Assembly (NCBI GenBank): GCA_013239625.1
Contig: MU056000.1
Coordinates: 558,001-622,000, forward strand
Origin: Lama guanicoe
Taxonomy: Eukaryota
Length of the DNA: 64,000 nucleotides
Direction of reading: 5' to 3'
This document shows, in pieces, positions 38,201 to 41,200 of the stretch. Within the stretch, counting starts at the first letter, position 1. Each line of letters begins with the position of its first letter. The notes beneath the pieces are model-generated. The model saw only the letters and a program-made list of their open reading frames with translations. It was not told the origin of the DNA and did no database searches. The translations under genes and the position numbers were made by a program.

Positions 38201-41200
38201 GAGGCCGGAGGTCGGTCCTGGGAGCCTTTCTCCAGAGCAGGGCAGGGCTCCCCTGGGACACGATCTCTGACAGACAGAGGGACGGACATGCAGCACAGGG
38301 ACGGCCTGTGGCCCCCATGGTCCAGAGCAAGAGCCTGAAACCCCAGAAATGTGCCCAGAAGCAGTTCACCCACAGCCACGGCAGTGGTCACCTCCCAGCG
38401 TGGCAGCCTCCCCCACTCCCGGGAAGGCCCCCGGGAGGTCCTGGCGGGGGTCCACTGAAGTGGCTTCCGCCCCTCTGCCTGGGGAGGGCACGCAGAGCGA
38501 GGCTGGACAGGAGCGCGCTCCAGGCTGCCCAGTGGAGGCCGAGACCCCACATCCCGCCTCCGTTACATCCTCCTGAACAGCAGGTTCTTCCCTCGCACTG
38601 GCGCCCTCAGGGGCGCAGGACGCAGCCTGTAGCCTGCTGGTTTACAGGAGGAGGAAAGAGAGGGGGTGCCTGCCCGTGGCCCGACTTCTGACGGCCGCGG
38701 GGGCCGGCGCCAGTCTGGACCGGGCACGAAGGAGGCCCTCGGGGAGCCAGGCACCTCGGCTCAGGGATGGCCAGACCAGCAGGGCAGAGAGGTGGCCAGG
38801 ATCGCCCGCCAGCTTTGTCTCAGCATCCAAGCTGGGGGCCGCCCCTCGAGGCGAGCCGGGGCTCAGGCCGCACCTGCCCTCCTGCTGCTCGCTCTGAGAA
38901 CAGGGCCTGCAGCCTGCTCTCCAGTTGAGAGCTGGGGAACAAAAGGAAATGTTACTGCTGAGGCCTGGGACAGCCGAGCCACCGGCAGCGGAGTCGAAGA
39001 GGGTGAAACCGCTGCGAGACGAGGCCAGGTGTTTGGTCAAGATTCCAGAGAGGAAGGGACGTGGGTAACGCTTCCCGAAATTGGCCTGAGGTGTTTTTCC
39101 TGAGCACCCTCCTGAGTCACCGCGGGCAGGACGGGTGTCCAGCCCCGGCCGCCCCAGCCCCACGGCCCCTCTCCTGAGCAGCTCCACGCTTCCAGGTGCG
39201 GCTCCTACAAAGCCTCCCCAGCGGCGTCCTCGCGCAGAGCCCTCAGGGCCACGTGGCTTCACCTGGCGCAGATTCCCAGAAATAACCCGTAGGAAATAGA
39301 GCTCCGAGGAAGACGGCTGCAGGGTAAGTCCCACGATGGGAGACAAAGTGGGGGGGGCCCAGGAGTCCCGGGGGGAGGGGGGCCCAGGGCGGTGGGGGCC
39401 CAGGAGTCCCGGGGCGGCGGCGGGGCGGTGGGGAGCCCCACCTTGGCCTCGCGCCGCCGGCTGTCCTCGGCCTCCTCGTGCTCCACGACGCCCTGGCTCA
39501 GGTTGGTGTAGTTGGCCAGCTTGTTGAGCAGAAGGGTAAGTCCCACGATGGGAGACAAAGTGGGGGGGGCCCAGGAGTCCCGGGGGGAGGGGGGCCCAGG
39601 GCGGTGGGGGCCCAGGAGGCCCGGGGCGGCGGCGGGGCGGTGGGGAGCCCCACCTTGGCCTCGCGCCGCCGGCTGTCCTCGGCCTCCTCGTGCTCCACGA
39701 CGCCCTGGCTCAGGTTGGTGTAGTTGGCCAGCTTGTTGAGCAGTGAGGACACCATGGGGTTGCTGTCCATTTCCTCCTGTTTGGGGACAAGACGTGGAGC
39801 TAGACACTCACCCCCAGCTGAGACGCCCCCAGACCAATGGGATTGACTACCCAGTGGGGACCCTGCCGACTCCGGGGCTGTCTGGGGCCTCAGCTCCACC
39901 TGCCCTGAAGCCAACAGACCTGAAAGGGGTCTGAGGCCCCAGACACGCGCTCAGCAGGTCAGAGTCAGGGGCTCGAGGACACGCTGAGTGGGGCCACCAG
40001 CCGAGAGGGAGGCCGGGGTCCCCAGACGGCCCGGATTCAGCCTCTCTGAGGGGCTCCCTAAGGCCTCTGTGTGACCCGCGTTTCTCCATGATACTGGGGG
40101 CCTCAAGACCACGGCCTCTTTTCTTGAACAAACCACAGCTCCTCTCGCACCTCCTGCTCCGAAGGGAAAGTGCGAGTTACCTCAAACAGCGCCATGTTCT
40201 TTCGCTCAAAGAGACTCTCCCTGTCCACCTCGCCGCCGTGAATGAACGGGCTGTTCTCCCTGGGGGTTCCATCTCCTGCGGAGAGAGGTCAGTCAGTTTT
40301 GGAAGGGACTGAAGGAGGCACCGAGGGGCCCTGGGGAGGGGCTTCCTCGCATGGCTCTGACTCTTGGAGCAGGAGACCCGGGTAGAAGATAGTCAAGGAC
40401 AGCGCTCTTCCCATGAAATTCCCAGGATAAACGTCCCAAGACTGGCAGCTCCTGAGAGCCTGGCCATGACCGTCCACGGTGGACGGGGCGGCACAAGGTT
40501 TGCTGTCTGTTTCGACAGCAGCTGTGGGTTTCCAACTCCTCTGATCCTGTCGGTTTTGGTGGCCTCACCGGTGATTCCCCCACGGGGCTGTCACGGAGCC
40601 CAAGTGGCAGGTGGCCCAGGGCTGCCCTGCTGTCTTCATGGCTGTTTCTGTCCAGAGGGTCAACCCTCCAGCCCCAGGCTCGAGTCTATCAAGGCCGCAC
40701 CGTGGCCAGACCACAGAGGGACGAGGGTCAGCCCCAACTCAGTCTGCAATGCTCCCAGACCTTCAAACACTGGCCCGACCGCATGCTCCAAATTTAAAGT
40801 TTAGAGAAAAACCAAAACGGCATGGCTCTGATCCCCAGCCCTGCCCACCCCACTGCAACGGGGCAATGCCATCCCAGAAGCCACCCACAGAGACAGGCCG
40901 GACTCAGAGAGCAGTGGGGCTGGGACTGCCTGCACCCCTGTCTGACCCTCCAAGTGAGCACCACCCATGGGCCTGGGGGCCCCACAAGGCCTTCTGCTTG
41001 CAGCCTAACCCCACATCAGAAGGACCAAGGGAGGACGCCAGGGAAAGGTGTCCAAAACCGGCTTCTCTCAGGCCCCCGGGGTCTCCGGGCCGACCTGAGC
41101 ATGAGCTTAGCAGGGAATCACTGGCCCACACAGGTCCGGCCGGGGGTGACTGGCCATGGCCTGACCTCCTGACAGACTCCCCAAAGAGACGGGCAGGGCA

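What the first reader, a model, noticed from the sequence alone, without database searches (positions are those of the whole stretch)
39321..39743. Tandem duplication of part of KCC4 exon 3 may create an extra in-frame exon repeating the autoinhibitory N-terminal peptide
Seen: two 211-bp copies (one mismatch, GCAG at both ends of the unit) covering codons L85-K114, the exon-3 donor and 121 nt of intron. The second copy on the transcript lacks the native acceptor, but the junction reads CTTAC-CCTTCTGCTCAACAAG|CTG. That is a YTNAY branch-like motif, a short pyrimidine run and an AAG acceptor. Using it gives a 78-nt phase-0 exon (39442..39519, [26 protein letters not shown]) after a 134-nt intron. 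Known: in KCC cryo-EM structures this N-terminal segment plugs the cytoplasmic vestibule and autoinhibits transport. Inference: a lineage- or allele-specific isoform with a doubled inhibitory peptide. Caveat: the scaffold is gapped and the unit is G-run rich, so a false duplication (for example two haplotypes placed in tandem) is at least as likely.
Basis: partly seen in the sequence, partly recalled or inferred. Interest (0 to 1): 0.8.

Follow-up and report, generated by a model that had tools for sequence, protein, structure and literature searches.

The report
Unverified partial exon duplication in KCC4
The assembly really contains a near-perfect 211-base head-to-tail duplication of the end of a KCC4 (SLC12A7) coding exon plus the start of its intron, but no read evidence could be obtained, so it is most likely an assembly error or a splice-silent duplication rather than a new transporter isoform.

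Summary
Two 211-nt units (39321-39531 and 39533-39743) sit head to tail, joined by one filler base (39532), and differ at one position (39407 T / 39619 G). On the minus strand each unit carries codons L85-K114 of SLC12A7/KCC4, the exon's GT donor and 121 nt of intron.

Whether the duplication exists in the animal could not be tested.

Indirect evidence leans towards an assembly artefact. The scaffold is gapped, the stretch is 74% G+C with many G-runs, and first-reader notes (unchecked) list at least seven other near-perfect exon-hitting tandem duplications in this genome. No N gap separates the two copies, so the evidence is not decisive.

If the duplication is real, the new acceptor is plausible but weak. 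All 15 true KCC4 acceptors in the window are YAG, and 6.6% of decoy AGs score as well.

The extra exon would repeat only part of the inhibitory peptide: L12 and helix N2, but 3 of the 10 residues of helix N1. There is no transcript evidence. Interest is low until reads are laid.

The parts
39654..39776 (-). Native KCC4 (SLC12A7) coding exon, E74-K114 in mouse numbering. Its acceptor is CAG at 39779-39777 and its donor GT is at 39653-39652.
   Evidence: 39/41 identity to 6UKN residues 74-114 and to 7D99; for the splice sites.
39533..39743 (-). Duplication unit, first copy on the transcript. It holds the native 3' 90 nt of the exon (L85-K114), donor D1 and 121 nt of intron. It carries G at 39619.
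39532..39532 (.). Single filler base at the junction (A on the + strand, T on the transcript).
   Evidence: the period is 212 while the units are 211 nt.
39321..39531 (-). Duplication unit, second copy on the transcript. It is identical to the first except for T at 39407.
39520..39653 (-). Hypothetical 134-nt intron from GT donor D1 to the AAG acceptor. It is C-rich. Its only AG is its last two bases. Its only YTNAY motif is CTTAC, with the A 17 nt from the 3' end.
39442..39519 (-). Hypothetical extra exon of 78 nt, phase 0, repeating L89-K114. It is followed by donor D2 (GT at 39441-39440), whose context is identical to D1.
   Evidence: There is no transcript evidence.
40181..40275 (-). Upstream KCC4 exon (...ENSPF...NMALFE), 95 nt.
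36574..36720 (-). Downstream KCC4 exon ([17 protein letters not shown]..., TM1), 147 nt. It lies 2.7 kb downstream of donor D2.

Best explanation
The second copy is an assembly artefact, a 'false exon gain'. Two overlapping pieces of this G-run-rich, 74% G+C stretch were butted end to end instead of being merged, for example at a closed gap or contig join. That left one spurious junction base, and one sequencing or haplotype difference between the copies. On this reading the animal has a single copy, KCC4 has its ordinary exon, and no doubled peptide exists. What is shown: the duplication is in the assembly, with the anatomy described. What is inferred: that it is not in the animal's genome.
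For: The copies are 210/211 identical, with a 1-nt filler exactly at the join. That is the pattern expected when overlapping ends are abutted. The single difference fits a heterozygous site or a read error. The scaffold is gapped with an estimated-size gap (166 N at 28749-28914), which suggests a scaffolded and possibly gap-filled assembly. The unit is 74% G+C, with seven G-runs of 4-8 within 90 nt, which is hard for sequencing and assembly. Ko et al. 2022 (PMC9516828) document false exon gains within genes, sometimes joined by unsupported sequence from incorrect gap filling. First-reader notes on this genome list at least seven other near-perfect tandem duplications that hit exons (F7, PSD, CELSR1, PRRC2B, SREBF1, NHERF1, C1QTNF5). 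That seems too many for real events in about 585 windows, but these notes are unchecked leads. None of the 24 public runs holds more than 0.85 of the sampled words of 39150-39900. This is compatible with assembly-only words, but it is weak evidence. A real, fixed duplicate of a working donor inside an essential transporter gene would risk a frameshifted product.
Against: No N gap lies between the copies, and the nearest is 10.4 kb away. A gap between copies is the commonest hallmark of same-scaffold false duplications in Ko et al.. A clean head-to-tail junction with a 1-nt filler is also what real replication-slippage or template-switch duplications look like, and G-run-rich DNA favours those too. 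No other such duplication occurs in this 64-kb window. No read depth or junction evidence was obtained.
Confidence: 0.55

Rival explanations
1. The duplication is real and young, fixed or polymorphic, but silent or nearly silent in splicing. Donor D1 of the native exon joins directly to the next exon at 36720, and the second copy is removed as part of the intron. KCC4 protein is then unchanged.
For: The junction is clean, head to tail, with a 1-nt filler and no N gap. The G-run-rich template is prone to fork stalling. The candidate acceptor has A at -3, whereas all 15 true KCC4 acceptors in the window are YAG. In addition, 103 of 1566 decoy AGs (6.6%) score at least as well on a PWM built from those sites. 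The gene needs an intact frame. Using only donor D2 would insert 212 nt and meet a stop 52 codons after K114, so selection would only tolerate the duplication if D1 is joined to the next exon or the pseudo-exon is cleanly defined.
Against: The arguments for an artefact given above apply here too. From my own knowledge (Eperon et al. 1993 EMBO J 12:3607, listed in the references of PMC8724738; the paper itself is not held), when two identical strong donors compete, the one nearer the acceptor (here D2) tends to win. Complete silence is therefore not guaranteed.
Confidence: 0.33
2. The duplication is real and its second copy is used as a cassette exon (39519..39442). This would give a KCC4 isoform with 26 extra residues that repeat L89-K114 directly before TM1. 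The copy next to TM1 would keep the native spacing but have a charged segment (SRRREAK) in place of the hydrophobic start of helix N1. The complete peptide would lie 26 residues further away. The likely effect is altered, probably weakened, autoinhibition.
For: The exon preserves the frame at 78 nt, and its donor context is identical to a proven donor. The AAG is the only AG in the 134 nt after D1, and a CTTAC branch-like motif has its A 17 nt upstream. The PWM score of 5.1 lies inside the leave-one-out range of true sites (-2.9 to 11.7, median 6.5). The segment carries the enhancer content of a constitutive exon. A downstream 5' splice site stimulates U2AF binding at the upstream 3' splice site (PMC8724738). 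The repeated residues include L12 and N2, whose mutation raises KCC2 activity (PMC7732191).
Against: There is no DNA-read or RNA evidence at all. The RNA run share of 0.27 is about what the exon letters alone would give. AAG acceptors are a small minority, 0 of 15 here. The repeat lacks 7 of the 10 N1 residues, so it is not a second full inhibitory peptide.
Confidence: 0.07

Closest known systems
False exon gain from assembly duplication errors (Ko et al. 2022, Genome Biol 23:205, PMC9516828)
   Same: A near-identical extra copy of part of a gene lies on the same scaffold, in a sequence that is hard to assemble, and it would be read as extra coding sequence.
   Different: The published cases are mostly separated by an N gap and are usually larger. 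Here the copies abut with a single filler base. Depth and k-mer multiplicity, the defining tests, could not be run.
Small tandem duplication by replication slippage or template switching, giving rise to a duplicated exon
   Same: The arrangement is head to tail, with a short filler at the junction and very low divergence (1 in 211). It includes a working donor and in-frame coding sequence.
   Different: Classical tandem exon duplications copy a whole exon with both splice sites. Here the native acceptor is not copied, and a makeshift AAG acceptor is created by the junction.
N-terminal autoinhibitory peptide of KCC2/KCC4 (Xie et al. 2020, Sci Adv 6:eabc5883, PMC7732191)
   Same: The native exon encodes the KCC4 counterpart of N1 (V82-N91), L12 (Y92-G98) and N2 (V99-S108). 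This mapping comes from aligning the residues named in the paper (Y91, T92, N93, L94, P95, Q96, H101, E102, E105 of KCC2) with the window's exon.
   Different: The hypothetical extra exon holds only L89-K114: 3 of 10 N1 residues, plus all of L12 and N2. No KCC isoform with a repeated peptide came up in the one literature search on the peptide; I did not search for one specifically.

Membership tests
False duplication in an assembly (criteria of Ko et al. 2022) | Half (heterotype) or very low (homotype) read depth over the duplicated copies | not testable with these tools
The cap is one call.
False duplication in an assembly (criteria of Ko et al. 2022) | Assembly gap between the duplicated pair on the same scaffold | tested here: not met
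   The only N run in the window is 28749-28914. The copies are joined by a single A. Ko et al. also describe joins by unsupported gap-fill sequence, so this does not exclude an artefact.
False duplication in an assembly (criteria of Ko et al. 2022) | Haplotype-specific (1-copy) k-mers distinguishing the copies | tested here: inconclusive
   There is one difference, 39407 T / 39619 G. It could be a heterozygous site, an error or a post-duplication mutation. Read multiplicity is unavailable.
Real tandem duplication | Head-to-tail copies with a junction showing microhomology or a short filler | tested here: met
   The junction has a 1-nt filler. GCAG occurs at or next to both unit ends.
Real tandem duplication | Junction-spanning reads in the sequenced individual and in independent samples | not testable with these tools
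The word shares (at most 0.85) cannot be broken down by position.
Cassette (alternatively included) exon | Functional 3' splice site: AG, pyrimidine tract and branch point | tested here: inconclusive
   The site is an AAG with 76% pyrimidines at -20..-4 and a CTTAC branch motif. Its PWM score of 5.1 lies within the range of true sites, but 6.6% of decoy AGs score as well and 0 of 15 true sites have A at -3.
Cassette (alternatively included) exon | Functional 5' splice site and frame-preserving length | tested here: met
   The donor context is identical to the native donor (GAGGCCAAG|gtggggctcccc). The exon is 78 nt and phase 0.
Cassette (alternatively included) exon | Spliced transcripts containing it | not testable with these tools
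   No reads could be laid.
KCC N-terminal autoinhibitory peptide (N1-L12-N2) | Complete N1 helix, L12 linker and N2 helix in the repeated segment | tested here: not met
   The extra exon starts at L89, so it lacks V82-K88 of N1. L12 and N2 are complete. The native exon does hold the full peptide.

The most novel reading that the evidence does not exclude
A bat-lineage or allele-specific KCC4 isoform in which a junction-created AAG acceptor turns a 211-bp tandem duplication into a 78-nt cassette exon. The exon would repeat the L12 linker and N2 helix of the autoinhibitory plug directly before TM1 and so retune autoinhibition of K-Cl cotransport.
Probability: 0.07. Interest if true: 0.6.

Novelty: not a real feature. 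Interest (0 to 1): 0.2.

Why it matters
If it is an artefact, it is one more case where an assembly duplication would create a false extra exon in an annotated transporter gene. Together with the other near-perfect exon duplications noted in this genome, it would argue for screening the assembly before any gene-gain or isoform claims. If it is real and spliced, it would be a natural experiment on the KCC autoinhibitory plug: a transporter carrying a second, N1-truncated copy at the native distance from TM1, in a gene needed for hearing and renal acid handling in mice (my own knowledge: Boettger et al. 2002). That would be worth an oocyte flux assay, but only after the DNA and RNA are confirmed.

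Tried and rejected
The tandem-repeat and repeat scans were run beside those places. Everything else on them was local reading or local scripts.

2. The word shares from the look-up of sequencing runs cannot be broken down by position, so the 0.85 ceiling does not decide between a real duplication and an artefact.

3. I looked for other near-perfect two-copy tandem duplications in the window, as a sign of a systematic artefact. There are none, only ordinary micro- and minisatellites.

4. I searched earlier findings for follow-ups that had tested similar duplications in this genome with reads. None were found, only first-reader notes.

5. Alternative in-frame acceptors inside the copy (39492, 39480, 39474 and others) all score below zero and were rejected.

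6. I tried to read Eperon 1993 and 2000 on competing identical donors. They are not held, so that point rests on my own knowledge.

A structure prediction of the doubled peptide was therefore not made.

8. No vertebrate genome collection is available among the tools, so other assemblies of the species could not be compared.

Full report
**What is in the sequence**

Tandem Repeats Finder reports one array at 39321-39743 with period 212, 2.0 copies, 99% matches and no indels. The repeat finder gives two copies 212 nt apart. An offset scan shows 219/249 matches at offset 212, against 69-97 at neighbouring offsets.

Read base by base, the structure is:
- unit 1 at 39321-39531 (211 nt)
- a single extra A at 39532
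- unit 2 at 39533-39743 (211 nt)

The only difference between the units is 39407 T against 39619 G. GCAG lies at or next to both unit ends. Because a filler base is present, this microhomology cannot be assigned a role with confidence.

The unit is 74% G+C and has seven G-runs of 4-8 bases within 90 nt on the + strand. It is the only near-perfect two-copy duplication in the 64-kb window. The other tandem arrays are ordinary micro- and minisatellites.

**Which gene and which residues**

The gene runs on the minus strand. The exon at 39776..39654 (123 nt, CAG acceptor, AAG|GT donor) matches residues 74-114 of mouse KCC4 (PDB 6UKN) at 39 of 41 positions. It matches the equivalent stretch of human KCC4 (7D99) equally well, with E about 1e-18, and other KCCs more weakly.

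The neighbouring exons are at 40275..40181 (...NMALFE) and 36720..36574 ([17 protein letters not shown]..., TM1).

On the transcript each unit begins exactly at codon L85. RNA rows labelled 'bat metagenome' among the holders suggest that the window comes from a bat. Organism names are coded.

**Is the duplication real DNA?**

This is the decisive question, and I could not answer it. The look-up of sequencing runs listed 24 runs. DNA runs from five organism labels hold 0.77-0.85 of the sampled words. The best RNA run holds 0.27, which is about what the exon letters alone would give, since they are counted in both copies.

Scans were run beside those places, and everything else was local.

The tools hold no vertebrate genome collection, so other assemblies could not be compared.

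**Indirect evidence**

For an artefact:
- The scaffold carries an estimated-size gap (166 N at 28749-28914), which suggests a scaffolded and possibly gap-filled assembly.
- The stretch is of the kind that sequencing and assembly handle badly.
- One stray base at the join and one difference between the copies are what abutted, unmerged overlaps look like.
- Ko et al. 2022 document false exon gains, sometimes joined by unsupported gap-fill sequence (PMC9516828).
- First-reader notes on this genome list at least seven other near-perfect tandem duplications hitting exons: F7, PSD, CELSR1, PRRC2B, SREBF1, NHERF1 and C1QTNF5. That is more than I would expect from real events in about 585 windows. 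These notes are unchecked, so I treat them only as a prior.

For a real event:
- No N gap separates the copies. A gap is the most common hallmark of same-scaffold false duplications, so that hallmark was tested and not met.
- A clean junction with a 1-nt filler is typical of replication-based duplications.
- G-run-rich DNA promotes such duplications.

My estimates are 0.55 for an artefact, 0.33 for real but silent or nearly silent, and 0.07 for real and spliced in.

**If real, would the second copy be spliced in?**

I located 15 true KCC4 acceptors in the window by their coding continuity and built a small position weight matrix from them.
- All 15 are YAG. The candidate is AAG.
- The candidate scores 5.1. 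Leave-one-out scores of the true sites run from -2.9 to 11.7, with a median of 6.5.
- 103 of 1566 other AGs on the same strand (6.6%) score at least as well.
- Its pyrimidine content at -20..-4 is 0.76, within the true range of 0.59-0.82.

The 134 nt after donor D1 contain no AG except the terminal one. They contain a single YTNAY motif (CTTAC), whose A lies 17 nt from the 3' end. The donor behind the candidate exon has a context identical to the native donor. A downstream 5' splice site is known to help U2AF binding at a weak upstream 3' site (PMC8724738).

The site is therefore usable in principle, but not distinguishable from roughly a hundred decoys in 24 kb. Other in-frame AGs inside the copy score below zero.

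If donor D2 were used without the new acceptor, the mRNA would gain 212 nt and reach a stop 52 codons after K114. From my own knowledge (Eperon et al. 1993; not held in the library), two identical donors compete and the one nearer the acceptor tends to win. A real duplication might therefore not be entirely harmless, which is a mild argument against its fixation.

**What the extra exon would encode**

Xie et al. 2020 (PMC7732191) show that in KCC2 a peptide V81-N107 occupies the cytosolic vestibule and locks the transporter. Its parts are helix N1 (V81-N90), linker L12 (Y91-G97) and helix N2 (S98-N107). Mutating L12 or N2 residues raises flux, and a similar peptide is clearly resolved in KCC4.

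Shifting by one residue for KCC4, the native exon encodes N1 (V82-N91), L12 (Y92-G98) and N2 (V99-S108). The 78-nt candidate exon encodes L89-K114. That covers the last 3 of the 10 N1 residues, all of L12, all of N2 and the basic tail.

The copy next to TM1 would keep the native spacing but would have the charged SRRREAK in place of the hydrophobic VSSLLNK of N1. The complete peptide would be displaced by 26 residues.

The phrase 'repeating the autoinhibitory peptide' is therefore only partly right. The likely effect, if the isoform existed, would be altered and probably weaker plugging. This is inference only.

**Verdict**

Whether the feature is biologically real is undecided, and an assembly artefact is the best single bet. 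The isoform reading is unsupported by any transcript evidence, and its structural description needs correcting. Interest is low unless junction-spanning DNA reads, and then spliced RNA reads, are shown.

Noticed in passing
window 39321-39329 and 39533-39541 (+ strand): Each unit starts on the + strand with AGGGTAAGT, a near-perfect 5' splice-site consensus on the strand opposite to KCC4. Its reverse complement supplies the CTTAC branch-like motif of the candidate acceptor.
   Followed up: no
window 39520-39653 (- strand): The first 133 nt after the native exon's donor contain no AG dinucleotide at all and are very C-rich. This is unusual enough to note, and it holds for the native intron as well as the copy.
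   Followed up: partly
window 28749-28914: The only N gap (166 N) lies in the intron between the KCC4 exon encoding ...[14 protein letters not shown] (about 29070-29012) and the exon starting at 28561. No coding exon appears to be lost in it.
   Followed up: partly
window 6162-6483: A 42-bp minisatellite of 7.7 copies at 91% identity, G+C-rich, lies downstream of the 3' end of KCC4.
   Followed up: no
window 9828-9875: A (CAC)16 trinucleotide repeat. On the minus strand it reads as a run of tryptophan codons inside a chance ORF.
   Followed up: no
window 23112-23118: The acceptor of the exon beginning ...(VE)[10 protein letters not shown] is ambiguous between TTGCAG|GTTGAG and GTTGAG|AATGAC. 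I left it out of the acceptor control set.
   Followed up: no
same genome, other windows (earlier notes): Many first-reader notes describe near-perfect tandem duplications overlapping exons in this assembly (F7, PSD, CELSR1, PRRC2B, SREBF1, NHERF1, C1QTNF5). A genome-wide check against reads would show whether this assembly has a systematic false-duplication problem.
   Followed up: no
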